Virus record (IMG/VR): IMGVR_UViG_3300033997_000478 | Location: 62,001 to 126,000 of that record | Strand: one strand, 5' to 3' | Length of the DNA stretch: 64,000 bases | Shown here: piece by piece, positions 1,240 through 62,307 of the stretch | How the letters are laid out: each line of letters begins with the position of its first letter | How positions within the stretch are numbered: position 1 is the stretch's first letter | Position numbers and translations under genes: made by a program | The notes under the pieces: model-generated | What the model was told of the DNA's origin: nothing | The model's database searches: none | Seen by the model: the letters and a program-made list of their open reading frames with translations, nothing else

Positions 1240-3639
1240 ATGAAACAGGTCAACGAACACCGCGCCGAATTGGCGTCCTCAGCATCGTTCAACCCGTTCA
1301 TCGCCCATGATTCCTCTGCCCGCGTGCAGATGATGGGCTCGCATCTTTCGCAAGCACTCCCCGTCAAGGATTGCCAACCGCGCCGGATTCTTACCGGCAT
1401 GGAACGGGAATTTGGCCGGGCCACGTTCAATGTCGAGATTCCGGTGGATGCGGAAATCATCGACATCATTCACAAGTTCACCGATACAGCCGGTGCAGGT
1501 GGTATTCGCATCAACCCCACCACCGTGATCATCTACATGGATGCTCGCACCAACCAGTTCGATGCCGTGGAGTTCAACAGCTACCACAGCATGCACCAGT
1601 CGTTCGGCTTCAACTTCGTCCGCACCCAGGCCATGCGCAACCTGCGTCCTGAGCAGTCGATCCCGGCCGGCACCGTACTGGGTCGTTCGCCGACACTGGA
1701 TGATCAGGACAACTACCGGATCGGTCTGAACGTCAAGTCGGCGTTCATGTCCATTCCCGGCGTTACCGAGGACGGCTTCATCGTCTCCGAAAGCCTGTGC
1801 AAGCGCATGACCACCACGTGCATCAAGAAGACCAGCTTCAGCTGGGGCAAGACGTGGTATCCGCTGAACTTGTACGGCGATGAGAAGAACTACAAGCCGA
1901 TGCCCGACATCGGTGATCGCATCCGTGACGATGGCCTGATCTGCACCCTGCGCCGCATGGACCAGGATACGGACATCATGTACTATCCGCTGGAGATGTC
2001 CAACGAAGCCCTGCAACGGGTGGACTACTTCTTCGACCAGCGCGTGTACGGCAAGAAGGGCGCCAAGGTGATCAACATCACCTCCCGCCACGGTCAGCGT
2101 GCATGGCCACGTACACCTGATGGCATGGAAGTGCAGGCCAAGAAGTACTACGACGCCGAGTGTGAGTTCCACCAGGCCATTCTGGACAGCCACCGCAAGT
2201 TGGCTCGTCGCTACGGCGATCGTGTGGCACTGGGTGGTACGTTCTCGATGTTGTTGCGCGAGGCCCGGCTGTTCCTGCCGTGCGAGCAGCGCGCCAAGTC
2301 GACCCAGATGTACCAGCTGCAACCGCTGGACGACTGGCGCATCGACCTGACCTACGAGTACGACTTCGTTCCGACCATCGGCTCCAAGCTGACCGGTCTG
2401 CATGGCGACAAGGGCGTGATCTGCCAGATCTGGCCGGACGAAGACATGCCGGTGGATGAGTGGGGCAATCGCGTTGAAGCGATCTCGCCTGCGTACTCCT
2501 CCATCGACCGCATGAACGATGGCCGACCGATCGAGCATGAGATCAATGGCTCGATGGAAATGATGACCGAGGCGGTTCGTATGGGCATGGGCGCACCGCT
2601 CAAGTTCATCGACCCGGCAACGCATCAGGCCATGCTGGAAGTGCGCGCCGAGCGTGAACGTCGTGGACTGCCGGTGCCCGATGGGCAGGTGGCCGCCGAA
2701 CAGATCGCAGCACGGATCAACGGCGACTACAACAACGCCTTCCACGAGGTCAAGGAGTACTACAAGACCATGTCCCCGAAGTTCGGTGCGATCTTCGATC
2801 GTCCGGATTACCTCAATGCAGGCGGTGGTGCGAAGTACCACATCGACGACCTGCTCAAGGATGGGATGTACTTGTGGGCACCGCTGGATACCCCCAAGAT
2901 CTGGCCGGATGTCATCGACGACATCGATCCGGATACCAAGGCGCGCATGATTGCTGAAAGCATCGTTGCCTCGGATCAGACCTTGGGCATGGTGGTCGGG
3001 GACAAGCAGCTCTACCCGGCACGCCGTTCGATCCTGCGGTTCCGTGGTCGCTCCGGCAAGATCCGTTTTACCGAAGAGCCGATCATGGTGGCTGATCTGT
3101 ACCACATCCTGCTGGAGAAAACCGGCAGCGACTGGTCCGGTGTATCCACGGCCTACCACCAGCACTTCGGCCTGCCAGCCAAGCAATCCAAGCAAGACCG
3201 TGATAGCAGTCCGGGTCGTGCCAATCCGGTGCGCATCTTCGGTGAGGCAGAAGTTCGCCTGACCAGTGCCGTGCTCGATAGCAAGATCGTGGCTGAGACC
3301 ATGGAAATGTCCACCAATCCTGCTGTGCACAAGAACGTGGTGTACAACATCCTCAAGGCACCCCAGCCGTCCAACATCGAAGAGGTGGTGGATCGCAGCA
3401 AGGTCCCGATCGGCAACAGCCGCTCGCAGTCGTTCGTGGCACACGGCCTGCAGTGCGCAGGTATCGAGCTGCGGTACGTCGACCATACCACCGAAGGCGA
3501 GGTCTATCCGGCCGATCCGGGTGGTGCTGCATCGGATCTGGGTCTACTCACTGGGGATGAGGAGGATGACGATGATGATGTCAATGAAAACGAGGACGGC
3601 GACGACAGTGCCGATGATGGCGATGACAGCGACGATTGA
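1240..3639 (+). CDS. Non-virion RNA polymerase beta subunit, C-terminal part (phiKZ gp71-73-like)
   Basis: SSARVQMMGSHLSQA (beta NRALMGSNMQRQA equivalent), GSKLTGLHGDKGVI (beta GDKxxGRHGNKG equivalent), RIFGEAE; acidic C-tail. Confidence 0.92.
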   Translation: MKQVNEHRAELASSASFNPFIAHDSSARVQMMGSHLSQALPVKDCQPRRILTGMEREFGRATFNVEIPVDAEIIDIIHKFTDTAGAGGIRINPTTVIIYMDARTNQFDAVEFNSYHSMHQSFGFNFVRTQAMRNLRPEQSIPAGTVLGRSPTLDDQDNYRIGLNVKSAFMSIPGVTEDGFIVSESLCKRMTTTCIKKTSFSWGKTWYPLNLYGDEKNYKPMPDIGDRIRDDGLICTLRRMDQDTDIMYYPLEMSNEALQRVDYFFDQRVYGKKGAKVINITSRHGQRAWPRTPDGMEVQAKKYYDAECEFHQAILDSHRKLARRYGDRVALGGTFSMLLREARLFLPCEQRAKSTQMYQLQPLDDWRIDLTYEYDFVPTIGSKLTGLHGDKGVICQIWPDEDMPVDEWGNRVEAISPAYSSIDRMNDGRPIEHEINGSMEMMTEAVRMGMGAPLKFIDPATHQAMLEVRAERERRGLPVPDGQVAAEQIAARINGDYNNAFHEVKEYYKTMSPKFGAIFDRPDYLNAGGGAKYHIDDLLKDGMYLWAPLDTPKIWPDVIDDIDPDTKARMIAESIVASDQTLGMVVGDKQLYPARRSILRFRGRSGKIRFTEEPIMVADLYHILLEKTGSDWSGVSTAYHQHFGLPAKQSKQDRDSSPGRANPVRIFGEAEVRLTSAVLDSKIVAETMEMSTNPAVHKNVVYNILKAPQPSNIEEVVDRSKVPIGNSRSQSFVAHGLQCAGIELRYVDHTTEGEVYPADPGGAASDLGLLTGDEEDDDDDVNENEDGDDSADDGDDSDD

Positions 3640-3651
3640 GGGAGATAAGTA

Positions 3652-5643
3652 ATGCGTCGTTTCCATGCTCGTGAACTGGCTGCCATGCCCAAGGCCGAGC
3701 TCTGGGAGATCCCTCAGGAAAGGATCATCGTTGTCTTCGACGACGGTGAGGTGGAATGCTGGACCAGTGAGGCGCTGTACTCGGCCTACATGTGGGGGTT
3801 CTACGTGGACTTCCCCGAAACGCCGGCACTGAAGAAACATCACCTGGGCAAGCGCAAGATTGGAACCAGCACGCATCTGAACATGATCAACGAAGTTCGT
3901 TGGGATTGCCATGATGCCTACGATGGCCAGATTCGTTCGGACATCTTGAACAAGAAAGCGCTGGAATACATCAACATTGCCTACAATGACCTGAGCGAAG
4001 GAAGCGAAGCGTGGGCCACCACGCTGAGCCAGCTGGACATCAACGCGGTGATGCATCACCCGGAGATCAAGGCTGCCAACGAACAGGTCACCATCGCCGA
4101 CAAGACCATCGTGCATGCACATCGCACGATCGAACGGGTCTTGAAGGACGCCAAAGAGCTGGTGGGTAACTCCCTGGCTCTGGCGGTACAGTGCGGGCTG
4201 GTGAAGCTGGGGCAGGTGTTGCAGGTGATTGGTCCGCGAGGATCGGTGACCGACAACGACTCCAACATCTTCCCCTACCCGGTGCAGGTGGGTTTCGCAC
4301 AAGGCCTCTACCGGTTCTACGACAGCTTCATCGAGTCGCGGACGGCCTCCAAGTCGCTGACCTTCACCGAAAAGCCGCTGCAGGATACGGAGTACTTCAA
4401 CCGTAAGTTGCAGCTGCTGGCAGCGACCCTGCGTGATCTGTACGATGGCGACTGCGGTACTGAGCAATACCTGCTGTGGCAGATGGGGCCGGGCGATCTG
4501 GAAGCCTTCAAGGGTAAGTACTACCTGAAGGACGACGGGACGCTGGGCATGATTCAGAACAACGATGAATGCCGTAAGGAACTGGTAGGTAAATCGGTGC
4601 GCATCCGCTCGCCGCTGTACTGCGCCACCCCTGACTCCACGATGGTCTGTACGACCTGCTACGGTGAGATGGAGAAATCCATCCCCCACGGCACCAACAT
4701 CGGCCACGTGGCTGCCACTGCGTTGTGTAAGCAGGCCTCCCAGCGCGTGCTCTCCACCAAGCACTTGGATACCTCCGCTTCCAGCTCGGGTCTGCGCCTG
4801 TCTGAATTCGAACAGCGTTACGTTCGTCTGGGCAATGATCCGAACCTGCTGTTCCTGGCACACCGCCTGGCAGAAGGAGCGAAGATCAAGTTGTACATCT
4901 CCGCCGATGAAGCCGAGCGCATTGCAGAGGTCAAGTCGGCAGAGAACGTGGAGATCCTGCTTCCCAGCCACATCAGTGCGCTGACGCAGGTGACCTTCGT
5001 GGTGACCAAGAACGGCAAGGAAGAAGCCGAAGTCGTGCAGGTGTCCAATGGTAGTCGTACCAGCTCGCTCTCGCGCGAAATGCTGGTGCACCTGCGCACC
5101 CATGGCTGGAAGCTGCTCACCTCCGATCGTGGTGGTAGCAATGACATCGAGATCGACCTGACCGAGTGGGATCCGGATCAGCCGCTGTTTGCAACACCGC
5201 GGCGTCAGGAGAACATGCTCGATTACATGGCGACCATCGAGAAGTTCCTGAAGGCGGCGAAGAAGGGCTCTGCCCATAAGTCGCTGAAGGACTTCATGAC
5301 GGTCGATGGTGCAGCACGGGGTCTTTACGATCTGGTCAGTTCTCGCCTGTTCGTGAACTTCGTGCATCTGGAGATCCTGGTGAAGGTCTGTCAGGTCCGC
5401 TCCACGCATCACCGTGATTCGCGCATCCCGTTGATTGGCAACAAGGTGGAATTCGGTCGTTTCGACTTCACCATCTTCAGCCGCTCGGCCGGTGCGAGCA
5501 TGGCGTATCAGAATCATCGTCAGCAGTGGAATTCGCCGACGACGTATCTGACGCACCTGCGTCCGCCCCATCCGCTGGATCCCATCCTGATGCCGTTGCC
5601 GCAAACGCCATCGGTCCACTGGAAGGCGGGTAATTCGTTGTGA
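3652..5643 (+). CDS. Non-virion RNA polymerase beta' subunit, C-terminal part (phiKZ gp74-like)
   Basis: DGDCGT, IRSPLYC, CTTCYG, GTNIGHVAATALCKQASQRVLSTKH (trigger-loop region), VHLEILV. Confidence 0.92.
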   Translation: MRRFHARELAAMPKAELWEIPQERIIVVFDDGEVECWTSEALYSAYMWGFYVDFPETPALKKHHLGKRKIGTSTHLNMINEVRWDCHDAYDGQIRSDILNKKALEYINIAYNDLSEGSEAWATTLSQLDINAVMHHPEIKAANEQVTIADKTIVHAHRTIERVLKDAKELVGNSLALAVQCGLVKLGQVLQVIGPRGSVTDNDSNIFPYPVQVGFAQGLYRFYDSFIESRTASKSLTFTEKPLQDTEYFNRKLQLLAATLRDLYDGDCGTEQYLLWQMGPGDLEAFKGKYYLKDDGTLGMIQNNDECRKELVGKSVRIRSPLYCATPDSTMVCTTCYGEMEKSIPHGTNIGHVAATALCKQASQRVLSTKHLDTSASSSGLRLSEFEQRYVRLGNDPNLLFLAHRLAEGAKIKLYISADEAERIAEVKSAENVEILLPSHISALTQVTFVVTKNGKEEAEVVQVSNGSRTSSLSREMLVHLRTHGWKLLTSDRGGSNDIEIDLTEWDPDQPLFATPRRQENMLDYMATIEKFLKAAKKGSAHKSLKDFMTVDGAARGLYDLVSSRLFVNFVHLEILVKVCQVRSTHHRDSRIPLIGNKVEFGRFDFTIFSRSAGASMAYQNHRQQWNSPTTYLTHLRPPHPLDPILMPLPQTPSVHWKAGNSL

Positions 5644-17542: not shown

Positions 17543-18109
17543 TCAACCCATCGACCCCATGCGGGTCATGCCGCGTGGGGTGAAGGTGTCCATCGACGTT
17601 CCACCGGAGATCGAACCACTGCGCTGCAGCGTCTTCAGCAGACCCGTACTGACGGTCAGCTTGAACTGGGTGAGCGCATGCTTCATGAGCATGCCCTCCA
17701 CCTCGCGGACAAACCGCGCGTCCATGTCCAACGCTTCGCGCCGATCCTTCGGCTCACCGTAGGAGACCGGCAAGACGTACGTCTCCACGCGCAGGGGATT
17801 GCGTTGGGAATAGGCCTGGGTGAGGCGGCGGTGGGAATTCCGACTGTAGTAGTAGTCCTGCAGCGGAATGTCGGCCACACCTGCCTGCTTGAGCTGGTGT
17901 CCGTAGGCGCCCAGCGCTGCATTGTAGGTCGAGGGCAGGGATTGACCACGGCGAAGGAACTGCACATCCACCGGTCCGTAGAAGGTGAGCGTCCAGACCT
18001 GACTCGGGTGGCCCTTGGCCCACTTCTCCGTCACACGCTGACCGGAGTGACAGCTGTAGTAGGCCGTACGAGTCAGGCCCTTGGTTTCTTCCTTCTTTTT
18101 CTTCGCCAT
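17543..18109 (-). CDS. Hypothetical protein
   Basis: Start placed at ATG 18109 (MAKKKKEETKG); host-type codon usage. Confidence 0.75.
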   Translation of the reverse strand: MAKKKKEETKGLTRTAYYSCHSGQRVTEKWAKGHPSQVWTLTFYGPVDVQFLRRGQSLPSTYNAALGAYGHQLKQAGVADIPLQDYYYSRNSHRRLTQAYSQRNPLRVETYVLPVSYGEPKDRREALDMDARFVREVEGMLMKHALTQFKLTVSTGLLKTLQRSGSISGGTSMDTFTPRGMTRMGSMG

Positions 18110-18203
18110 GATCTTGAGTTCAAAGGGATACACAACCACAAGCTGAACGTGTAAGAAATAACAACCCGCCGTTAATATTTGAAACATTACTCCTTGGTGC
18201 AAG

Positions 18204-18677
18204 ATGAGCGACAAAACCTATATCCCCGATCCGCTGCTGCCGGTCGAAGACCAGATTGCCCTGCAGACCCTCGATGACCGACTGGTGAACTACATCACCA
18301 AGATGGCACCGGGCAAAGCCAACTCCGATGCGGATCTGGCTCTGCAGCAGAAGCTGCTGATGAACAACGTGTTTGAGTACGCGCTGAACCTGCCGGCCCA
18401 CCTGTTCCACAAGGCATGGGCACAGATCCTCAACCGCGTACACCAGAACATCACCGGCTGCTTCTCGTTGGCTTACTCGGCACGCGGTCTGGCCTACATG
18501 CAGGTCGATCAGAAGACCCGCCGCAACTTCGAGCGCCTGCTGACGCTGACCTACACCACTGCCGATCCGAAGGCGCGCCAGTACTCGATCAAGCAGGTTC
18601 ATCTCGACCTGATCCTGGCCGGCCTGCCCAGCGAAGTGCAGCGGCAGAAGCTGCAAGACTTCTACACCTTCCAGTGA
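18204..18677 (+). CDS. Conserved phiKZ-like hypothetical protein
   Basis: 157-aa ORF, strong codon bias, followed by hairpins. Confidence 0.8.
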   Translation: MSDKTYIPDPLLPVEDQIALQTLDDRLVNYITKMAPGKANSDADLALQQKLLMNNVFEYALNLPAHLFHKAWAQILNRVHQNITGCFSLAYSARGLAYMQVDQKTRRNFERLLTLTYTTADPKARQYSIKQVHLDLILAGLPSEVQRQKLQDFYTFQ

Positions 18678-18684
18678 ACCATGG

Positions 18685-18743
18685 CCTCCTGCTTTCGGGC
18701 AGGAGGCTTTATGCAGCATAGACCCCCACCCGAAGGTGGGGGC
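18685..18743. terminator. Tandem terminator hairpins
   Basis: GCCTCCTGC-TTTCGG-GCAGGAGGC TTTATGC, then CCCCCACC-GAA-GGTGGGGG. Confidence 0.7.
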
Positions 18744-18914
18744 TTAGCTGTTGAATCAAGCTCTGGACCAGAGTTTAACACCACACGAGTGGTGCGTAAA
18801 ATGCTTCGGCTTACTAGCCACCCCCGCTATGAGGTGGGAGTAGGTTTACGAAGCTGCTCGGGTTTGGAAAGACTTTCGAGGGGTCTTCCAAATGATTACC
18901 AGCCGAGTAAAGAT

Positions 18915-18971
18915 TTACGAGAAGACCTCGTCAAGATCCATATCGGCCGTGGTCAGGCTCTTACCGTGCAT
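18915..18971 (-). pseudogene. Displaced original 3' end of the virion RNAP beta' gene
   Basis: Encodes MHGKSLTTADMDLDEVFS*, 47/57 nt identical to 19806-19862, with GC3-rich codons. Confidence 0.85.
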
Positions 18972-19765
18972 CATTCCAGGTAGCGGTAGTCGTCACGTCG
19001 TGGATCGCGGACGCGGTTCCAAACAGTCTTTGGGTCGATACCGAGCTCACGTGCCGCGCCAGCCACACTATCGAACTGACGATTCTCAGCGATGACTTTC
19101 TTGGCAAACGGATTGTTCCCACCAGACCAAGCCTCTTTACTTCCCTCTTTACCCCAGCGGGTACTCTGACCCTCACGGATTTTCCTCGAGCGTTCAGCGA
19201 GCTGCTCAGGGGTCATTTCCTTCAGGGCCCGACGTCGCGCAACTGCCATCTTTTCTTTCATCCCCTCACGCCCCATCACGTGGGAGATAGGAGAACGAAC
19301 ATCGGTGACAGCATTTAACAGAAGCGACTTGTCAGCGTTGTCAATGCGCCGCTTCTCGTCTTCGTAGGCCTCCTCTCGGGTGCCAAAGACGAACACGGTC
19401 AGGGTCCATTTGTCCTCGCCAGGATCTTGATCCCACAGGGCCTGCATGGCTTTGTTGTTGTGCTTTCCTTTGCGCAGACTCCAGAAGTGCGAAGCTCTGC
19501 GGTTTTGGATGTTCTGCGTGCTACCCACATAGAAACGTCCTGTCGCTTTGTGGGTGAGCCAGTACGTATACCCGATCGGAATCTTCGCTTCCTCTGCGAC
19601 CTCCGGGTACACGCCATCGTCGAAGAGCCGCCATTGCGACCACTTCGGGTCTTCACTGTAGACGCGGGCAAGGATGTAAGTCTTACTCACACCCAGTGCC
19701 CGCGCAGCTTCAGCTACTGATTTATAGATCTTGTCGTCAATGGTGACGTTGAAATAGTTCCGCAT
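18971..19765 (-). CDS. Free-standing GIY-YIG homing endonuclease
   Basis: GYTYWL...FYVGSTQN...R..SH; NUMOD1-like motifs (YKSVAEAARALG, FDSVAGAARELG) at both ends. Confidence 0.9.
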   Translation of the reverse strand: MRNYFNVTIDDKIYKSVAEAARALGVSKTYILARVYSEDPKWSQWRLFDDGVYPEVAEEAKIPIGYTYWLTHKATGRFYVGSTQNIQNRRASHFWSLRKGKHNNKAMQALWDQDPGEDKWTLTVFVFGTREEAYEDEKRRIDNADKSLLLNAVTDVRSPISHVMGREGMKEKMAVARRRALKEMTPEQLAERSRKIREGQSTRWGKEGSKEAWSGGNNPFAKKVIAENRQFDSVAGAARELGIDPKTVWNRVRDPRRDDYRYLE

Positions 19766-19805
19766 GCCAACCGCCAGTATGATTGCTCATACTATTTCCC
19801 TAGCA

Positions 19806-21089
19806 CTAAGAAAATACTTCCTCAAGATCCATATCGGCTGTAGTTAAGCTCTTACCGTGCATCAATTTCATGAAGACATCCATGAGCAGCGAACCGATGG
19901 CTGCGGCGTACGTGCCCAGTGCCTGCGGGGTCGAAGCGATGCCCTCACCCATACAGCAGCGGCAGTAGTTGTTGGTGCCGGACGTACCTGCACCGGTCAG
20001 GCAGTAGGCCGGAGAACGCACGACGATCATCTCGCCGAACTTCTTCTGCACCGTCTGCTCATCGATCAGGATCGACTTACCGTTGATCAGCTCGTAATGG
20101 CCGATCAGGTACGGCTGGTTGATCTTGTCAATGCGCATGCGCAGGCCACGCTGACTGCCGCAGTCTTCCTTGTAGACCACCGAGTTCTGGTACATGCGGT
20201 TGTTGTTCTTCACCTCCACGCCGCCCAGTGCAGTCTGCGCACCACGACCATAGGAGCCGTCGCGCAGCTGGTTGATCATGGCCGGCAACTTCTTGATGTC
20301 CCAACCTTCGGCCAGCGAGGTGGTGATCAGATCCGGGTCCAGACCAAAGCCGGTGGAGAAGCCTTGCATGATGTACAGCTTGGCGCGCACCACGTCGTAG
20401 GCCTTGCCCTTGATGTAGAAGCGGGCACCTGGGTCGTTCTTCATCCAAGCCCGATCCATCGCGGTCAGTTCCTTCATGATCCCTGCCACGACCACCGGGT
20501 CGTGCAGTTCGTCCTTGTGCAGAGCCAGAAGCTCGTCACGACGCTTGATCATGTTCGGATCACAGGTCATCGTCTTGGGCGTGGCCGACGGCACGCACAG
20601 CTGGGAGAAGCCCGGCAACTGACCTGCAGCCATCTGGTAGCGCAGGAACTCGCTGGTGCGAATGGCGGTGGGATCATTAGAGCTATCGTCCCAGTGCTTT
20701 TCGATGATCTTCTCGATTGCACCGATACTGATCTCGCCATTCATGTAACCGATCTTGCTGCCGAAGGGCCAGACCAACAGAAGCTGGTTCACCAGCGCGG
20801 TGCCATAGGAGGTCACCACTGCTTCGGGCTGGTTCTTCAACGAACCGGCCGGCAGTTCCAGCTTACCCAGCGCCTTGAACACCGGTTGTTCCGGATCGGC
20901 ATCATCGATCAGTTCAAAACCACCTTCAGGCTTGTAGAACGCCCAGCGGTTGTCTTCGGTCTTGAACAGGCCGTACGGGTAAGGGTGGGGTTTGCCCGGA
21001 CGGAAGATGCTGAAGGCTTCCAACACCCAGCGCTTCCACAGGTAGTTCTCAGCCTGCAGGCAGAGCAGGAAATATTCGCGCTTGTTCAC
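19806..21089 (-). CDS. Virion RNA polymerase beta' fragment (phiKZ gp80-like)
   Basis: GRGAQTALGG, EDCGS, VRSPAYC, CRCCMG zinc motif, LMDVFMKLMH. Confidence 0.85.
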   Translation of the reverse strand: MNKREYFLLCLQAENYLWKRWVLEAFSIFRPGKPHPYPYGLFKTEDNRWAFYKPEGGFELIDDADPEQPVFKALGKLELPAGSLKNQPEAVVTSYGTALVNQLLLVWPFGSKIGYMNGEISIGAIEKIIEKHWDDSSNDPTAIRTSEFLRYQMAAGQLPGFSQLCVPSATPKTMTCDPNMIKRRDELLALHKDELHDPVVVAGIMKELTAMDRAWMKNDPGARFYIKGKAYDVVRAKLYIMQGFSTGFGLDPDLITTSLAEGWDIKKLPAMINQLRDGSYGRGAQTALGGVEVKNNNRMYQNSVVYKEDCGSQRGLRMRIDKINQPYLIGHYELINGKSILIDEQTVQKKFGEMIVVRSPAYCLTGAGTSGTNNYCRCCMGEGIASTPQALGTYAAAIGSLLMDVFMKLMHGKSLTTADMDLEEVFS

Positions 21090-21922
21090 GCCTTGGCCTC
21101 GTCTACGTACTGCTTGATTTGCCGGGAGATCTTAGCCGAGTCGATCATGGGAATGTCGAACAGCTCCTTGGTCTTGTTGGAGACTTCCTCCAGCTTATCC
21201 AAGGGCAACGCCGAAGCGGCGGCAAAGACCACCAGCTCACCAGCCAGTTGGTTGGGTTTGAGCTGCATCAATGCATCGATGTGTGGTGCGATGGTTGCGT
21301 TGTAGGACATACCCAGCCGCAGGCCGTCGTCCAGAGCCTTCAGGAAGACGCTGGTCTCCGAGACCAAGCCTACCTTGGGGATCAACACGCGCAGGCGCTG
21401 ACGCGCCGCTGCGGCGTTCTGAGCGTCTGGTTGCGGTTCATTGCCTTCGGCGCTGGTGGCTTCTCGGATGCGGGTGAGCAGATCCACCGAAACATCGTTG
21501 ACGTGTTCAAGGATCTCTGCCGACGGAACGTTGCTGACATACTCGATCACATCGGCAAAGGCTTCAGTTGCGCCTTCGTCGTAATCGGCCAGCGCGTAGA
21601 TGGCTTCGTTGTCGCCCCAGTCATCGATCTGGTTGAGCGACTCCATCGTCACGTTGAGCATCTTCAGCGGTGTCTCTTGATCCATGTACACGCCGAACTC
21701 AGCCAATGCCTGACGCATCAGCGGAGACAAGATCAGGTTGATCTGCTTGTAGACAACATCAAACTCCAGACCCTCGGCGGTGTCCAATTGCTGCTGCAGC
21801 AAGAACTCGTGGTCGCTTACCCCGCTCTCCGCAAGGACGCGGCAACTGGTCAGGATGATCGTTCCCAGCTCCGATGTCGTTGCTTGATCGAGGTAGGCCT
21901 CAAGATCTGCAATCATGTCCAC
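21086..21922 (-). CDS. Conserved hypothetical (probable virion) protein
   Basis: 278-aa ORF; AAGGAG RBS; stop overlaps the vRNAP gene start. Confidence 0.8.
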   Translation of the reverse strand: MDMIADLEAYLDQATTSELGTIILTSCRVLAESGVSDHEFLLQQQLDTAEGLEFDVVYKQINLILSPLMRQALAEFGVYMDQETPLKMLNVTMESLNQIDDWGDNEAIYALADYDEGATEAFADVIEYVSNVPSAEILEHVNDVSVDLLTRIREATSAEGNEPQPDAQNAAAARQRLRVLIPKVGLVSETSVFLKALDDGLRLGMSYNATIAPHIDALMQLKPNQLAGELVVFAAASALPLDKLEEVSNKTKELFDIPMIDSAKISRQIKQYVDEAKA

Positions 21923-59226: not shown

Positions 59227-60696
59227 GTGAAGCAATATCTCGATCTTCTGCGTGACGTTCGCGAGAATGCACGTTACAAGCTGGACCGCACCAAGGTCGG
59301 CTGCTACTCAGTCTTCGGTCGACAGGTGAGGTTCAATCTTGCCGATGGTTTTCCGATGTGCACCACCAAGAAGCTGCACCTGCGTTCGATCATCCACGAG
59401 CTGCTGTGGTTCCTCAAGGGTGACACCAACATCGGTTACCTCAAGAGCCTGGGCGTGCGCATCTGGGACGAATGGGCCTCAGCGTCGGGAGATTTGGGGC
59501 CGATCTATGGGTTCGGCTGGCGGTACGCGCCCGTCGAAAATCCCAAGCATCTGGTCCAAGTTGCGATTCGCTCCGACCAAGATGCCGACTACGTGGAACA
59601 GATCCCCGCGTTCCAACCGCCCATCAAGTGCGATCTCAACAATGAACGCATGTGGGCCATCGAAGACCTGGGTGCAGACGGCGGGAACACCCGCTACAAG
59701 GTCCAGTTCGCCTCTGGTTTCATTGGTGAGATCTCGCGTCCGAACTGGCGTGCATTGACCGACTACGATGTGGTCGATGGTTACGCACGTACAGTGTGCG
59801 GTGTCGGCTATCTCGGTAATCCGGTCCTCAAGCACGACCGCCTGTACGCTCTTTGGCGTAACATGTTGGCCCGCTGCTACGACCCCGCACACCCCAGCTA
59901 TCCGTCGTATGGCGGTGCGGGCATCACTGTCTCGCCGATCTGGCATAGCTACGAGCAGTTCGTTCGCACGACAACGCGGCTACCGCTGTACGCACTGTGG
60001 AATATCCATCCGGGTAACTACGACCTGGACAAGGATTACTACGGAAGCGGCGTGTACTCGCCTAGCACCTGTGTGTTCATCCCACAGGAACTCAATGCCG
60101 CTCTCCCGAAGGACGGTATCGCGCTGGCCGTCAAGGGGCAGCTCTTTGCGAACTGGGAGGCCTTCGCGCGCCACAACCGTATTCGCCCGGATTACATCAA
60201 GGCTCGAATCTCTGAGGGGCATAAGTGCGGCGAATTCCACCCGGACGATTTTGAAGAAGTTCGTCCGAAGGAAGGGTTCTTGTATCGACAGAAGTTCTAC
60301 GTCGACCAGATCGCTGATGCCATCCATACGCTGCGAACGTCCCCGGCTTCCCGTCGGATCATCGTCAACGCCTGGCTACCGTCACTGATCGCAGACCAAG
60401 CACTTACCCCGTGTCATGCCATGTTCCAGTTCTACGCTGAAGAGCTGACCCTGCAAGAGCGCGCCACCCTGTACATCGCCAAGCAGTACCCGGAAGGCAT
60501 CAGTGCGGCGCAGTACAACGCTGACCACCTGCTGGGTCTGGTCAAGATCTACGAGGAAGAATCCAAGCTCACCTTCCATGGCGAGTACGGTGCTGCTGGC
60601 CAGCCGGAATTGGAACAGCGACTGGAAATGATCGAAGTGATCCTCGAAGAGCACAAGATCCCGAAGCATCGCCTGTCCTGCCAGCTCTACCAGCGT
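59227..60696 (+). CDS. thyA: Thymidylate synthase exon 1, with in-frame HNH-like insertion
   Basis: DRT.VG, TTKKL, ELLWFL.G, IWDEW, LGPIYG, SRRII, PCH, YQR; ends CGT at the intron 5' splice site. Confidence 0.93.
59527..60300 (+). mobile_element. HNH-type endonuclease domain (~258 aa) inserted in frame in ThyA
   Basis: [12 protein letters not shown]...[10 protein letters not shown]...W, LDKD....[14 protein letters not shown] between [10 protein letters not shown] and VDQI. Confidence 0.8.
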
Positions 60697-60799
60697 AAAC
60701 AACACTGCGCCATTGCAGCGTGAGCTGCATTGAAACACATTCCTTAAAGCAATACATGTCCAGGAAGTAGTGTTCCGGGGCAATGACAGGAGAATTAAT

Positions 60800-61387
60800 T
60801 TGAGCGAACCACCGTCTGAACCAGAGGAATTCTGGAAAAGAGTCGAGAAATTCAAAAGACTAGAAGTCTCCAATCTGGGTGGTGCGCGAACGGTGTGGCC
60901 GCACAAGGTTAAGGTTCTTCAGCCGATGAAGGCACCTTCCAGTAAGGATCATTACCTGAAAATTTCAGTTAGTCCTTCGGAAGGAGGTAAACAAAAACAG
61001 GTCATGATCCACACCCTCGTTGCTGAAGCTTTCATTGATCGACCATCGGGTATTGTCGATATGGAAGTCAACCACAAGGATGGGGTAAAGACGAACAATG
61101 TTGCGACGAATCTCGAATGGACAACCCACCAAGGGAATATCCAACATTCGTTCGAAAGCGGATTGAGGGCGGCGTGTGTCGGTGAACTTCATCCACAGGC
61201 GAAATCCGTCCGGGCTATAAATGTGATGGACGGCGAAATTATCGCTGCCGGGACCGTTGACGAGTTGGCTCAGAAACTGGGCGTCGAAAGATCCTTCATT
61301 CGAAGGAGATTAAATGGAACCGTCACATCCATAAATCCTAAATTGCCTTACCGAATCGAAGGTCTGGGAAAGGGCAACACTACCTGA
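60800..61387 (+). CDS. Intron-encoded NUMOD4-HNH homing endonuclease (P2 loop)
   Basis: EVSNLG..R, IHTLVAEAFI, VNHKDGVKTNNVATNLEWTT...N..H; AGGAGA RBS before TTG 60800 (GTG 60770 alternative). Confidence 0.9.
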   Translation: MSEPPSEPEEFWKRVEKFKRLEVSNLGGARTVWPHKVKVLQPMKAPSSKDHYLKISVSPSEGGKQKQVMIHTLVAEAFIDRPSGIVDMEVNHKDGVKTNNVATNLEWTTHQGNIQHSFESGLRAACVGELHPQAKSVRAINVMDGEIIAAGTVDELAQKLGVERSFIRRRLNGTVTSINPKLPYRIEGLGKGNTT

Positions 61388-61530
61388 GCTAAATCAGTGT
61401 CCTCACCCAAAGGAATGTGTAAACCTCTCTAAAACGGGAAACTCTCGACTGAGACAATCCGTTGCTAAATCGAAACAACCTGAATAAAGACCTACACTAT
61501 CCTCAGGCTAGTAATCAGAGGAGAATTGTG

Positions 61531-62307
61531 ATGACAATTGCCGCCTATATCCTGACTGACCCCATCTCTGGGTTCGAGTACTACGGCAGCAGTGAAAATG
61601 TGGAAGTACGTCTTGATCGACACTTCCGCGACCTTCAAGCCAACCAACACCACAACAGTAGACTGCAGGAGCTGTACAACGCAGGTCGTGTGTTGGACAA
61701 GATCATCTTTGAAAGTAGTACAATCGAAGATGCCCGTGAAACCGAACTGGCGTTTATCAATTCCCACCAAGGTAGCTGGAGAATGATGAACATTGGTCTT
61801 GGCGTTAACGGGGGCGATAATCTCTCGAACCATCCAGAGCGGGAACGCATCATTTCGAAGATTTCTGAGTCCGTCCGAACGAGAATGGCTCAAATGTCAC
61901 CGGAAGATCGCAAGGAAAAGTGGGGACGCCCAGGCGCCAGCAACCCCATGTTCGGTAGGACCCACTCTGAAGAGGTCCGCCTTGCAAGTTCCAAGCTTCA
62001 TCGGGGGAACACCCACGCTCTGGGAAACGAATGGTCCCCTGAAGCTAGGGCAAAGTTGTCGAAAATAGCTTCCGAACGGACAGGAGACAAAAATCCTTTC
62101 TTCGGTAAGACGCATTCGGCAGAGAGTCGCGAAAAAATAAGGCAGGCCAAACTCGGCGGGGGACCGCCGACGAATGCCATGAAGGTAATGGTCAAGGGTA
62201 TCGTTTACAATTCTGTCAAAGATGCTTGCGATGGTGTCGGGATCTCGTATCCGACCATGGCTAAGCGTCTGAAAAGTGACGACCCCGATTATTCATTTGT
62301 CTCGTAA
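61531..62307 (+). CDS. Intron-encoded GIY-YIG homing endonuclease with NUMOD3 repeats (P6 region)
   Basis: AAYIL...YYGSS....R...H, GGD, NPMFGRTHSEE, NPFFGKTHSAESREKI; GAGGAG RBS. Confidence 0.9.
   Translation: MTIAAYILTDPISGFEYYGSSENVEVRLDRHFRDLQANQHHNSRLQELYNAGRVLDKIIFESSTIEDARETELAFINSHQGSWRMMNIGLGVNGGDNLSNHPERERIISKISESVRTRMAQMSPEDRKEKWGRPGASNPMFGRTHSEEVRLASSKLHRGNTHALGNEWSPEARAKLSKIASERTGDKNPFFGKTHSAESREKIRQAKLGGGPPTNAMKVMVKGIVYNSVKDACDGVGISYPTMAKRLKSDDPDYSFVS

What the first reader, a model, noticed from the sequence alone, without database searches (positions are those of the whole stretch)
18915..19862. GIY-YIG gene invaded the virion RNAP gene by supplying a recoded replacement 3' end
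Seen: the functional gene ends ATG CAC GGT AAG AGC TTA ACT ACA GCC GAT ATG GAT CTT GAG GAA GTA TTT TCT TAG (19862-19806). Immediately after the endonuclease stop lies ATG CAC GGT AAG AGC CTG ACC ACG GCC GAT ATG GAT CTT GAC GAG GTC TTC TCG TAA (18971-18915). Identity is 47/57 and almost all differences are synonymous. The stranded copy has host-like GC3 codons and the in-use copy is AT3-rich like the HEG. Inference: intron-less homing in which the element carries a cleavage-resistant substitute C-terminus; the breakpoint and probable target lie near 19862.
Basis: partly seen in the sequence, partly recalled or inferred. Interest (0 to 1): 0.65.

Follow-up and report, generated by a model that had tools for sequence, protein, structure and literature searches.

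The report
Homing endonuclease carrying a replacement gene end
A selfish GIY-YIG nuclease gene in a giant phage sits just after the gene for a virion RNA polymerase subunit, brings its own re-coded copy of that gene's last 18 codons and leaves the original ending unused downstream; this layout is known from fungal mitochondria, and I found no report of it in phages.

Summary
Window 19806-19862 (-) is the in-use end of a 427-aa phiKZ gp80-type virion RNA polymerase subunit gene. Window 18915-18971 (-) is a second copy: 47/57 identical, one amino-acid change, and all 8 synonymous changes run G/C to A/T.

A 264-aa GIY-YIG/NUMOD1 homing endonuclease gene (HEG, 18971-19765) lies between the copies.

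- **Which copy is native.** Four HEG-less relatives (79-86% nt identity) have one GC3-rich end, 51-53/57 identical to the stranded copy and 42-44/57 to the in-use copy.
- **Evidence of mobility.** Variants 96-97% identical to the window share a 1037-nt mismatch-free tract spanning exactly the cassette.
- **A second HEG lineage.** It is 62% aa identical and sits at the same site in another phage clade. It shares a 62-nt re-coded left arm (60/62). There the replacement end encodes a foreign peptide and only about 10 nt of the native end survive.
- **A likely footprint.** Xanthomonas phage LucasX has a re-coded end directly followed by the stranded native end, with no HEG.

Cleavage and immunity are untested. 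This is a phage counterpart of the fungal mitochondrial mobile-ORF elements that carry an inserted C-terminus.

The parts
19806..21089 (-). Gene for a 427-aa phiKZ gp80-type subunit of the virion RNA polymerase (the invaded gene).
   Evidence: phrog_2962 E 2.3e-122, positions 1-426 of 433. tblastn to phiKZ PHIKZ080 gives 34% identity over 98%. gp80 is a vRNAP subunit (PMC10612078).
19837..19898 (-). Left arm of the cassette. This 62-nt re-coded stretch is shared with the second HEG lineage and extends 36 nt upstream of the duplicated segment.
   Evidence: 60/62 identical to L018, whose gene body is only about 50-70% identical. It is 51/62 identical to the much closer naive L008 (my count from the codon alignment). 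Synonymous difference pS is 0.16 here against 0.57 in the gene body (Fisher P 0.004) and 0.78 in the HEG (P 8e-6).
19806..19862 (-). In-use, re-coded last 18 codons plus stop (TAG) of the polymerase gene.
   Evidence: GC3 is 0.39 against 0.79 for the gene body; only 1% of 18-codon windows in the body are as low. It is 42-44/57 identical to the ends of naive relatives.
19766..19805 (-). 40-nt spacer between the polymerase stop and the HEG start. It contains a hairpin (inner stem 19776-19793), and an outer stem covers the HEG start codon.
   Evidence: RNA fold -16.2 kcal/mol, z -2.6. The L015 variant keeps the fold with changed bases, z -2.8. The fold is not conserved in the L018 lineage (z 0.74).
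18971..19765 (-). Free-standing GIY-YIG homing endonuclease gene, 264 aa. The domain order is N-terminal NUMOD1/HTH, GIY-YIG at residues 65-143, then a C-terminal HTH.
   Evidence: Pfam PF01541 37.8 bits and PF07453 29.8 bits; phrog_314 homing endonuclease E 1.7e-23. Residues Y68, Y79, R89, H93 and H102 align with I-TevI Y6, Y17, R27, H31 and H40. Against L015 there are 8 synonymous and 0 non-synonymous differences.
18915..18971 (-). Stranded native last 18 codons plus stop (TAA) of the polymerase gene. Its ATG overlaps the HEG stop (TGATG).
   Evidence: GC3 0.78. It is 51-53/57 identical to the single end of HEG-less relatives L007-L010. The following ~238 nt to the convergent gene match the ~237-nt intergenic region of those relatives.
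18946..19982 (.). Tract with no mismatch to variants L013 and L017. It comprises 120 nt of gene, the re-coded end, the spacer, the HEG and the first 26 nt of the stranded end.
   Evidence: This is the longest identical tract in 4.6 kb that otherwise shows 3.8-4.7% mismatches; P is about 1e-14 for a given tract of this length.
18723..18742 (.). GC-rich hairpin between the convergent genes, probably a shared terminator. It marks native sequence downstream of the stranded end.
   Evidence: Read directly from the sequence. The same position is annotated as a Rho-independent terminator in LucasX.
18204..18677 (+). Convergent 157-aa gene that bounds the locus in all relatives.
   Evidence: phrog_18957 E 3e-14. 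It is present in the same position in L007-L010 and LucasX.

Best explanation
The element is an 891-nt mobile cassette made of three parts: a re-coded copy of the last 18 codons of the gp80-type virion RNA polymerase gene, a 40-nt spacer, and a free-standing GIY-YIG homing endonuclease gene. It sits at the codon for M409, so the polymerase is completed by the cassette's own end and the native end is displaced downstream, unused.

Inferred mechanism: in a mixed infection the endonuclease cuts the conserved native sequence around the M409 codon of a HEG-less phage. The break is repaired from the HEG+ genome, and the nearby re-coded flank is co-converted. The silent A/T substitutions on both sides of the insertion point (19837-19886) make the HEG+ allele uncuttable. 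The stranded native copy is safe because it has lost the left half of the site. The same substitutions also lower homology between the two copies, which reduces loss of the HEG by recombination.

Afterwards the stranded copy follows different courses in different lineages. It exchanges patches with the in-use copy (L015), is deleted (L018/L011), or outlives the HEG (LucasX).

Shown: the architecture, which copy is native, presence/absence among relatives, recent exchange of the cassette, purifying selection on the HEG, and intact catalytic residues.

Inferred: cleavage, the position of the target, and immunity.
For: - **Native versus imported end.** The ends of naive relatives are 51-53/57 identical to the stranded copy and 42-44/57 to the in-use copy. 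The 891 nt are absent from them.
- **Direction of re-coding.** All 8 synonymous changes in the in-use copy are G/C to A/T. Its GC3 is 0.39 in a genome whose genes have 0.73-0.83.
- **Imported ends form a family.** The re-coded end of L018 is closer to the window's (43/57) and LucasX's (42/57) re-coded ends than to the native end of its own nearest HEG-less relative L019 (33/57). It also encodes a different peptide from that relative. A 62-nt arm is 60/62 identical between the two HEG lineages.
- **Mobility.** A 1037-nt identical tract covers the cassette in 96-97% identical variants. The cassette is found in two well-supported clades with naive sisters. The identical HEG protein lies on 17 contigs.
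- **HEG functional.** Pfam GIY-YIG and NUMOD1 score above their cut-offs. I-TevI catalytic residues are conserved. Against L015 there are 8 synonymous and 0 non-synonymous differences, P 6e-6.
- **Not an intron.** There is no Rfam intron match at E up to 1, and the polymerase ORF is complete and aligns to its family end to end.
- **Precedent.** The same layout is documented in fungal mitochondria (PMC3630166). HEGs are known to target chimallivirus vRNAP genes (PMC11620839).
Against: - No biochemical or genetic test of cleavage or immunity exists.
- The window's re-coded end is closer to its own stranded copy (47/57) than to L018's re-coded end (43/57). Its middle 15 nt are identical in both copies. 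Part of it may therefore derive from local duplication or gene conversion rather than import.
- The two HEG lineages are saturated at synonymous sites (pS 0.78) while the arm is almost identical (pS 0.16). Simple co-inheritance does not predict this.
- The HEG is less AT3-shifted (0.63) than the end it carries (0.39).
- No sample laid with contigs showed HEG+ and HEG- forms side by side, although contigs drop rare variants.
- LucasX has no relative closer than about 74% aa identity. Loss of the HEG there cannot be told apart from a pre-insertion state by comparison alone.
Confidence: 0.8

Rival explanations
1. Local origin. The last 57 nt of the gene were first duplicated in tandem in this lineage. 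A HEG then landed between the copies, and the upstream copy diverged in place. No gene end was imported.
For: LucasX shows a tandem pair of ends with no HEG, joined by the same TGATGC junction. In each phage the re-coded end encodes nearly the peptide of its own stranded end. The window's two copies share an identical 15-nt middle stretch that differs from naive relatives.
Against: The re-coded arm and the first re-coded codons are shared, 60/62, with a different clade whose native end is unlike it (33/57) and encodes another peptide. The re-coding extends 24-36 nt upstream of the duplicated segment. Eight of eight silent changes in one direction in only one copy is not neutral drift. Patchy gene conversion between the copies is directly visible in L015 and explains the shared middle stretch.
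Confidence: 0.12
2. The downstream copy is not a relic. It is kept because it is used, for example as an 18-residue micro-ORF translationally coupled to the HEG through the TGATG overlap, or as part of the 3' untranslated or terminator context.
For: The copy keeps an intact ATG-to-stop frame in all window-type variants and in LucasX, always with the TGATG overlap.
Against: It has been reduced to about 10 nt in L018 and L011, where the HEG is intact. It accepts a D-to-E change in L013 and L017, and converted patches (differing from the window's copy at 4 bases) in L015. The intact frame is what one expects of a young relic only 57 nt long.
Confidence: 0.05
3. The arrangement is an artefact of assembly across a repeat, or the HEG lies in a self-splicing intron or intein.
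For: One run's contigs break inside the repeated end at 18915-18944.
Against: The same arrangement is found in single contigs of up to 324 kb from several assemblers and studies. There is no Rfam intron match. A stop codon closes the polymerase ORF, and the protein aligns to its family over its full length.
Confidence: 0.01

Closest known systems
Mobile endonuclease ORFs (mORFs) of fungal mitochondria that carry an inserted C-terminal gene portion: Allomyces macrogynus atp6; Glomus sp. atp6, atp9, cox2 and nad3; Rhizopus atp9; Mortierella cox2 (PMC3630166)
   Same: The order of parts is the same: gene core, inserted C-terminus, endonuclease ORF (GIY-YIG in Glomus atp9), native C*-terminus. The native copy is the one most like ORF-less relatives, while the inserted copy diverges mostly at silent sites. 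The native end is retained wholly, partly or not at all in different cases.
   Different: The host is a giant phage, not a mitochondrion. The replaced segment is much shorter (18 codons). The inserted end has its own stop, so the HEG is a separate ORF behind a 40-nt spacer. Here a series of states can be seen: naive, occupied, occupied with the relic deleted, and HEG lost with the re-coded end kept. Patchy conversion between the copies is also visible.
Intronless homing by free-standing GIY-YIG and HNH endonucleases of T4-type phages (SegB, SegF, SegG, MobE; PMC2330249, PMC2790892, PMC2988022)
   Same: A free-standing HEG lies next to an essential gene, is polymorphic in presence among relatives, and co-converts flanking markers.
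   Different: In the T4 cases the HEG lies between genes and the donor's whole flanking allele replaces the recipient's. As far as I know and could find (7 text searches), no duplicated, re-coded gene end with a stranded native end is described.
PhiPA3 gp210, an intron-encoded HNH endonuclease targeting the vRNAP subunit gene gp178 of phiKZ (PMC11620839)
   Same: A HEG aimed at a virion RNA polymerase gene of a phiKZ-like phage. Silent mutations near the site protect the target in that study.
   Different: That element has a different nuclease family, a different subunit gene, and lies within a self-splicing intron. Here there is no intron; the gene stays intact because a replacement end is supplied.
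PhiPA3 gp078, a GIY-YIG endonuclease directly downstream of gp077 (the gp80 orthologue)
   Same: It has the same neighbour gene and the same side of that gene. It is the best phage-database match to the window's HEG (28% identity, E 1e-10).
   Different: It is 397 aa long and lies about 100 nt beyond the stop in intergenic DNA. I saw no duplicated or re-coded gene end on reading the sequence.
Aeromonas phage Aeh1 mobE insertion that splits nrdA into two genes (Friedrich et al. 2007, cited in PMC2988022)
   Same: A free-standing HEG inserted inside the coding sequence of an essential phage gene without destroying its function.
   Different: In that case the gene works in two pieces. Here the gene is kept whole by a substitute end and the displaced piece is discarded.

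Membership tests
GIY-YIG homing endonucleases (I-TevI / Seg type) | GIY-YIG catalytic domain with the conserved Tyr, Tyr, Arg, His and His residues | tested here: met
   PF01541 scores 37.8 bits against a cut-off of 22.6. Y68, Y79, R89, H93 and H102 align with I-TevI Y6, Y17, R27, H31 and H40. The Glu and Asn further on lie outside that alignment and were not mapped.
GIY-YIG homing endonucleases (I-TevI / Seg type) | Separate sequence-reading DNA-binding module(s) | tested here: met
   NUMOD1 scores 29.8 bits against a cut-off of 22.8. I-TevI_DNA-bd scores 26.8 against 27, which is borderline. There is a C-terminal HTH at residues 233-254. The order is unusual, with one module before the catalytic domain.
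GIY-YIG homing endonucleases (I-TevI / Seg type) | Site-specific cleavage of the HEG-less allele but not of the HEG-bearing allele | not testable with these tools
   This needs purified protein or phage crosses.
GIY-YIG homing endonucleases (I-TevI / Seg type) | Presence/absence polymorphism at one locus among close relatives, with signs of transfer together with flanking sequence | tested here: met
   HEG+ loci are L012-L018 and L011; HEG- loci are L007-L010 and L019-L020. A 1037-nt identical tract covers the cassette. Two clades with naive sisters carry it.
Intron- or intein-encoded homing endonucleases | The HEG lies inside a self-splicing group I intron or is fused in frame as an intein | tested here: not met
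   No Rfam intron match at E up to 1 in 18000-21500. The polymerase ORF closes with TAG 40 nt before the HEG start.
Endonuclease mORF elements with an inserted gene C-terminus (Allomyces atp6 type) | Order of parts: gene core, inserted C-terminus, endonuclease ORF, native C-terminus | tested here: met
Endonuclease mORF elements with an inserted gene C-terminus (Allomyces atp6 type) | The native copy is closest to ORF-less relatives; the inserted copy diverges in DNA but little in protein | tested here: met
   51-53/57 against 42-44/57 identical; one amino-acid difference.
Endonuclease mORF elements with an inserted gene C-terminus (Allomyces atp6 type) | The inserted C-terminus is of foreign origin | tested here: inconclusive
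   This is clear for L018 and L011, where the peptide differs from the nearest naive relative and the end is only 33/57 identical to it. In the window the end is a mosaic: the arm and outer codons are shared with L018, and the middle is identical to its own stranded copy.
Endonuclease mORF elements with an inserted gene C-terminus (Allomyces atp6 type) | Resides in a mitochondrial genome | tested here: not met
   The record is a 324-kb virus genome with terminal repeats. I therefore file it as working like a mORF element, not as a member by descent.
phiKZ-type virion RNA polymerase, gp80 subunit (the invaded gene) | Full-length homology to gp80 orthologues | tested here: met
   phrog_2962 E 2e-122. 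305 phage records were matched, including PHIKZ080.
phiKZ-type virion RNA polymerase, gp80 subunit (the invaded gene) | The protein is packaged in the virion as part of the early polymerase | not testable with these tools
   Inferred from orthology; phiKZ gp80 co-purifies with the vRNAP (PMC10612078).

The most novel reading that the evidence does not exclude
The re-coded arm and end act as a transferable immunity allele that is held in its A/T-third-position state by continuing attack from these endonucleases. On this reading the HEG works as a weapon against the essential virion polymerase gene of co-infecting relatives, as shown for PhiPA3 gp210. Genomes such as LucasX are 'vaccinated': they kept the resistant end after shedding the HEG. 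The near-identity of the 62-nt arm between two HEG lineages that are saturated at silent sites would then reflect selection on the DNA sequence itself, either for resistance to both nucleases or as an operator for the HEG.
Probability: 0.3. Interest if true: 0.7.

Novelty: new member of a known kind. Interest (0 to 1): 0.5.

Why it matters
- It shows that a phage homing endonuclease can invade the coding end of an essential gene without an intron or intein, by bringing a substitute end. I found this route described only for fungal mitochondria.
- It adds a second, different kind of HEG attack on virion RNA polymerase genes of phiKZ-like phages. Such nucleases have been shown to decide competition between co-infecting phages.
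- The natural series found here runs from naive, to occupied, to relic deleted, to HEG lost with the resistant end kept. This gives a concrete system for testing how immunity to a HEG is encoded and whether it can outlive the HEG.
- Practically, the stranded end and the tandem ends of LucasX are unannotated. Such repeats break assemblies and mislead gene callers.

Tried and rejected
- IMG/VR scans found nothing: the protein, the re-coded junction pattern and a degenerate junction pattern. The window's own genome is left out of those scans.
- Group I intron or other RNA family in 18000-21500: none. There was one chance-level match to an unrelated viral element, far below its gathering score.
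- Sigma-70 promoter and terminator scan of 18600-20000: no more sites than in shuffled sequence.
- Second GIY-YIG gene of the window (61462-62307): no flanking repeat of 24 nt or more.
- Genome-wide self-BLAST for other HEG-flanking repeats: the one other candidate (genome 265376/268137) lies inside two adjacent large ORFs and is a paralogous domain, not a displaced gene end.
- Laying contigs of four runs found no HEG-less joint and no deletion form. Contigs cannot show rare variants, so this says little.
- PDB sequence search with the HEG gave only a weak I-TevI catalytic-domain match (E 0.22). I used it only to place residues.
[quoted passage not shown] 1999) is not held. I cite it only by title, from the reference list of PMC2790892.
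- I did not use structure prediction, complex prediction or the large profile search. The family assignments were already clear.
Full report
**What is there.**
On the minus strand, an ORF at 19806-21089 encodes a 427-aa protein. It matches PHROG 2962 ('RNA polymerase beta subunit') from end to end (E 2e-122) and phiKZ gp80 over 98% of its length. gp80 is one of the four subunits of the phiKZ virion RNA polymerase (PMC10612078). The window is part of a 324,428-bp virus record with terminal repeats. Its nearest cultured relatives are the Xanthomonas jumbo phages RTH11 and LucasX, at about 57% aa identity.

Forty nucleotides after the polymerase stop begins a 264-aa ORF (18971-19765). It has a GIY-YIG domain (Pfam 37.8 bits, cut-off 22.6), an N-terminal NUMOD1 motif and a C-terminal helix-turn-helix. 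Residues aligned with I-TevI Y6, Y17, R27, H31 and H40 are conserved. Its TGA stop overlaps by one base the ATG of a second copy of the polymerase gene's last 18 codons and stop (18915-18971).

- The two 57-nt copies are 47/57 identical, with a chance probability of about 4e-18.
- Of the ten differences, eight are synonymous, one changes E to D and one changes the stop codon.
- All eight synonymous changes put A or T in the in-use copy where the downstream copy has G or C.
- GC3 is 0.39 for the in-use copy, 0.78 for the downstream copy, 0.79 for the rest of the gene, 0.73-0.83 for neighbouring genes and 0.63 for the HEG.
- The arrangement recurs in independent assemblies and is the only repeat of this kind in the genome.
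- No intron model matches.

**Which copy is native.**
A word-based protein search found metagenomic relatives with 85-90% aa identity. Their contigs (L007-L010) have no HEG. The polymerase gene is followed by about 237 nt and then the same convergent 157-aa gene. Their single gene end is GC3-rich (0.89-0.94). It is 51-53/57 identical to the window's downstream copy but only 42-44/57 to the in-use copy. BLAST shows that the 891 nt between the repeat starts are simply missing from them. RTH11 and Xoo-sp14 also have a single GC3-rich end. The downstream copy is therefore the original end, now stranded, and the in-use copy arrived with the HEG.

**Evidence that the cassette moves.**
- The identical HEG protein lies on 17 contigs.
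- Three of them (L013, L015, L017) are from phages 96-97% identical to the window.
- Against L013 and L017, the longest mismatch-free tract is 1037 nt (window 18946-19982). It runs from 120 nt inside the gene, through the re-coded end, spacer and HEG, to 26 nt into the stranded copy.
- The rest of the 4.6 kb compared differs at 3.8-4.7% of positions.
- Against L015, the HEG differs at 8 synonymous and 0 non-synonymous sites (P 6e-6), so the gene is under purifying selection.

**A second HEG lineage.**
A second HEG lineage (62% aa identity) occupies the same place in a different clade, L018 and L011. Their polymerase is about 60% identical to the window's, and the nearest HEG-less relative (L019/L020, 85% aa) has a plain GC3-rich end. 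A tree of the polymerase protein, with the last 32 residues removed, puts the two HEG-bearing groups in separate, well-supported clades, each with naive sisters.

**The imported part is larger than the duplicated part.**
Between the window and L018 the gene body is about 50-70% identical in 60-nt windows. Identity rises to 0.85-0.90 at window 19830-19920. A 62-nt stretch (19837-19898) is 60/62 identical in the two lineages. By my count from the codon alignment, the much closer naive relative L008 matches the window at only 51/62 there. The differences fall on silent positions on both sides of the M409 codon.

In L018 the end carried by the cassette encodes a different peptide from the native end of its nearest relative, and is 33/57 identical to it. 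It is 43/57 and 42/57 identical to the re-coded ends of the window and LucasX. The re-coded ends thus form a family that travels with the HEG.

The window's own re-coded end is a mosaic. Its outer codons are those of the family. Its middle 15 nt are identical to its own stranded copy and unlike the naive relatives. L015 shows how this can arise: its two copies have exchanged patches in both directions and are 53/57 identical.

**Fates of the stranded copy.**
| Lineage | HEG | State of the native end |
|---|---|---|
| Window type (window, L012-L017) | present | complete 57-nt copy downstream |
| L018 and L011 | present | only about 10 nt remain between the HEG stop and native downstream sequence |
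| LucasX | absent | strongly re-coded end (GC3 0.17) followed directly by an intact GC-richer copy |

In LucasX the two ends are joined by the same TGATGC junction found at the window's HEG stop. No homologue of this HEG was found in LucasX. In all three lineages the re-coded stop is followed by TGC. A deletion between that short repeat and the TGATGC at the HEG stop would give exactly the LucasX junction. I read LucasX as a genome that lost the HEG but kept the re-coded end. Because LucasX has no relative closer than about 74% aa identity, this direction is inferred, not shown.

**Mechanism.**
What follows is inference from the anatomy and from what is established for free-standing phage HEGs, namely cleavage of the HEG-less allele, repair from the donor, and co-conversion that declines with distance (PMC2790892).
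- The native sequence around the M409 codon is conserved across clades that are only about 60% identical in protein. That makes it a suitable target.
- The re-coded positions flank the insertion point on both sides.
- The intact stranded copy must escape cutting in its own genome. The recognition site therefore probably spans the junction at 19862/19863 and is split by the insertion, as an intron splits a homing site.
- The A/T bias could be kept because any drift back to the G/C codons favoured in this genome would rebuild the target. This would also explain why the arm is far more conserved at silent sites (pS 0.16) than the gene body (0.57) or the HEG (0.78). That contrast is otherwise unexplained.
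- Lower homology between the copies should also reduce loss of the HEG by recombination.

**Comparison with what is known.**
- The layout is that of the endonuclease 'mORF' elements of fungal mitochondria. They carry an inserted C-terminal gene portion and leave the native one downstream: Allomyces atp6, and Glomus atp6, atp9, cox2 and nad3, one of them with a GIY-YIG enzyme (PMC3630166).
- Free-standing HEGs and intronless homing are classic in T4-type phages.
- A HEG attack on a vRNAP gene of a phiKZ-like phage is known for the intron-encoded HNH enzyme gp210 of PhiPA3 (PMC11620839).
- PhiPA3 also has a GIY-YIG gene right after its gp80 orthologue, without a duplicated end that I could see.
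- Seven text searches found no phage case of a HEG-borne replacement gene end. The library is incomplete, so this is not proof of absence.
- I file the element as a new member, in a new kind of host genome, of a known kind of element.

**Limits.**
Nothing here tests cleavage or immunity. The host is unknown. The runs that hold the sequence are environmental: subsurface, soil, marine sediment and freshwater.

Noticed in passing
window 59227-62307 (+): This is a cluster of homing-endonuclease genes. A 498-aa ORF matches thymidylate synthase at residues 1-119 and 361-410, with an HNH endonuclease segment in frame between them (intein-like, or an intron ORF read through). It is followed by a separate HNH gene (60770-61387) and a second GIY-YIG gene (61462-62307, 29% identical to the one studied). 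No flanking repeat of 24 nt or more was found.
   Followed up: partly
L002 (Xanthomonas phage LucasX, MW825358.1) 3724-3836: There are two tandem copies of the last 18 codons of LUCX_91. The first is AT3-rich and in use; the second is GC-richer and unannotated. They are joined by TGATG and there is no endonuclease gene between them. The LucasX paper does not mention this.
   Followed up: yes
L021 695-2077 (protein P0009); also P0015 and P0029: Three metagenomic orthologues are 460-463 aa long. A GC-rich in-frame extension of about 30 residues ends in a second copy of the tail motif (ELDLE.SLT). This may be an older fused duplication of the gene end, or an unrelated expansion.
   Followed up: partly
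L015 2904-2960 and 3795-3851: In this variant the two copies of the gene end have exchanged patches in both directions and are 53/57 identical. This is direct evidence of gene conversion between the in-use and stranded copies.
   Followed up: yes
window 19760-19812 (-): The spacer RNA folds into a two-tier hairpin whose outer stem covers the HEG start codon (-16.2 kcal/mol, z -2.6). L015 keeps the fold with changed loop and stem bases. The L018 lineage does not (z 0.74). This may be translational control like that of T4 endonuclease genes.
   Followed up: partly
L004 (PhiPA3, HQ630627.1) 2425-3618: PhiPA3 gp078, a 397-aa GIY-YIG endonuclease, lies about 100 nt after gp077, the gp80 orthologue. 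The same gene boundary is therefore occupied by a HEG in a distant phiKZ-like phage. I saw no duplicated gene end there.
   Followed up: partly
window 18681-18983 (+): Gene callers placed a 90-aa gene on the opposite strand across the stranded copy in some assemblies (L012, L014, L016) but not in the variants L013, L015 and L017. It is probably a spurious call over the relic.
   Followed up: no
window 18723-18743: The GC-rich hairpin between the convergent genes recurs at several other places on long contigs of related phages. It looks like a shared terminator motif of this phage group (table 8).
   Followed up: no
window 18915-18944: In one marine-sediment run the contigs end and restart inside the repeated gene end. 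The repeat is long enough to break short-read assemblies (table 8).
   Followed up: no
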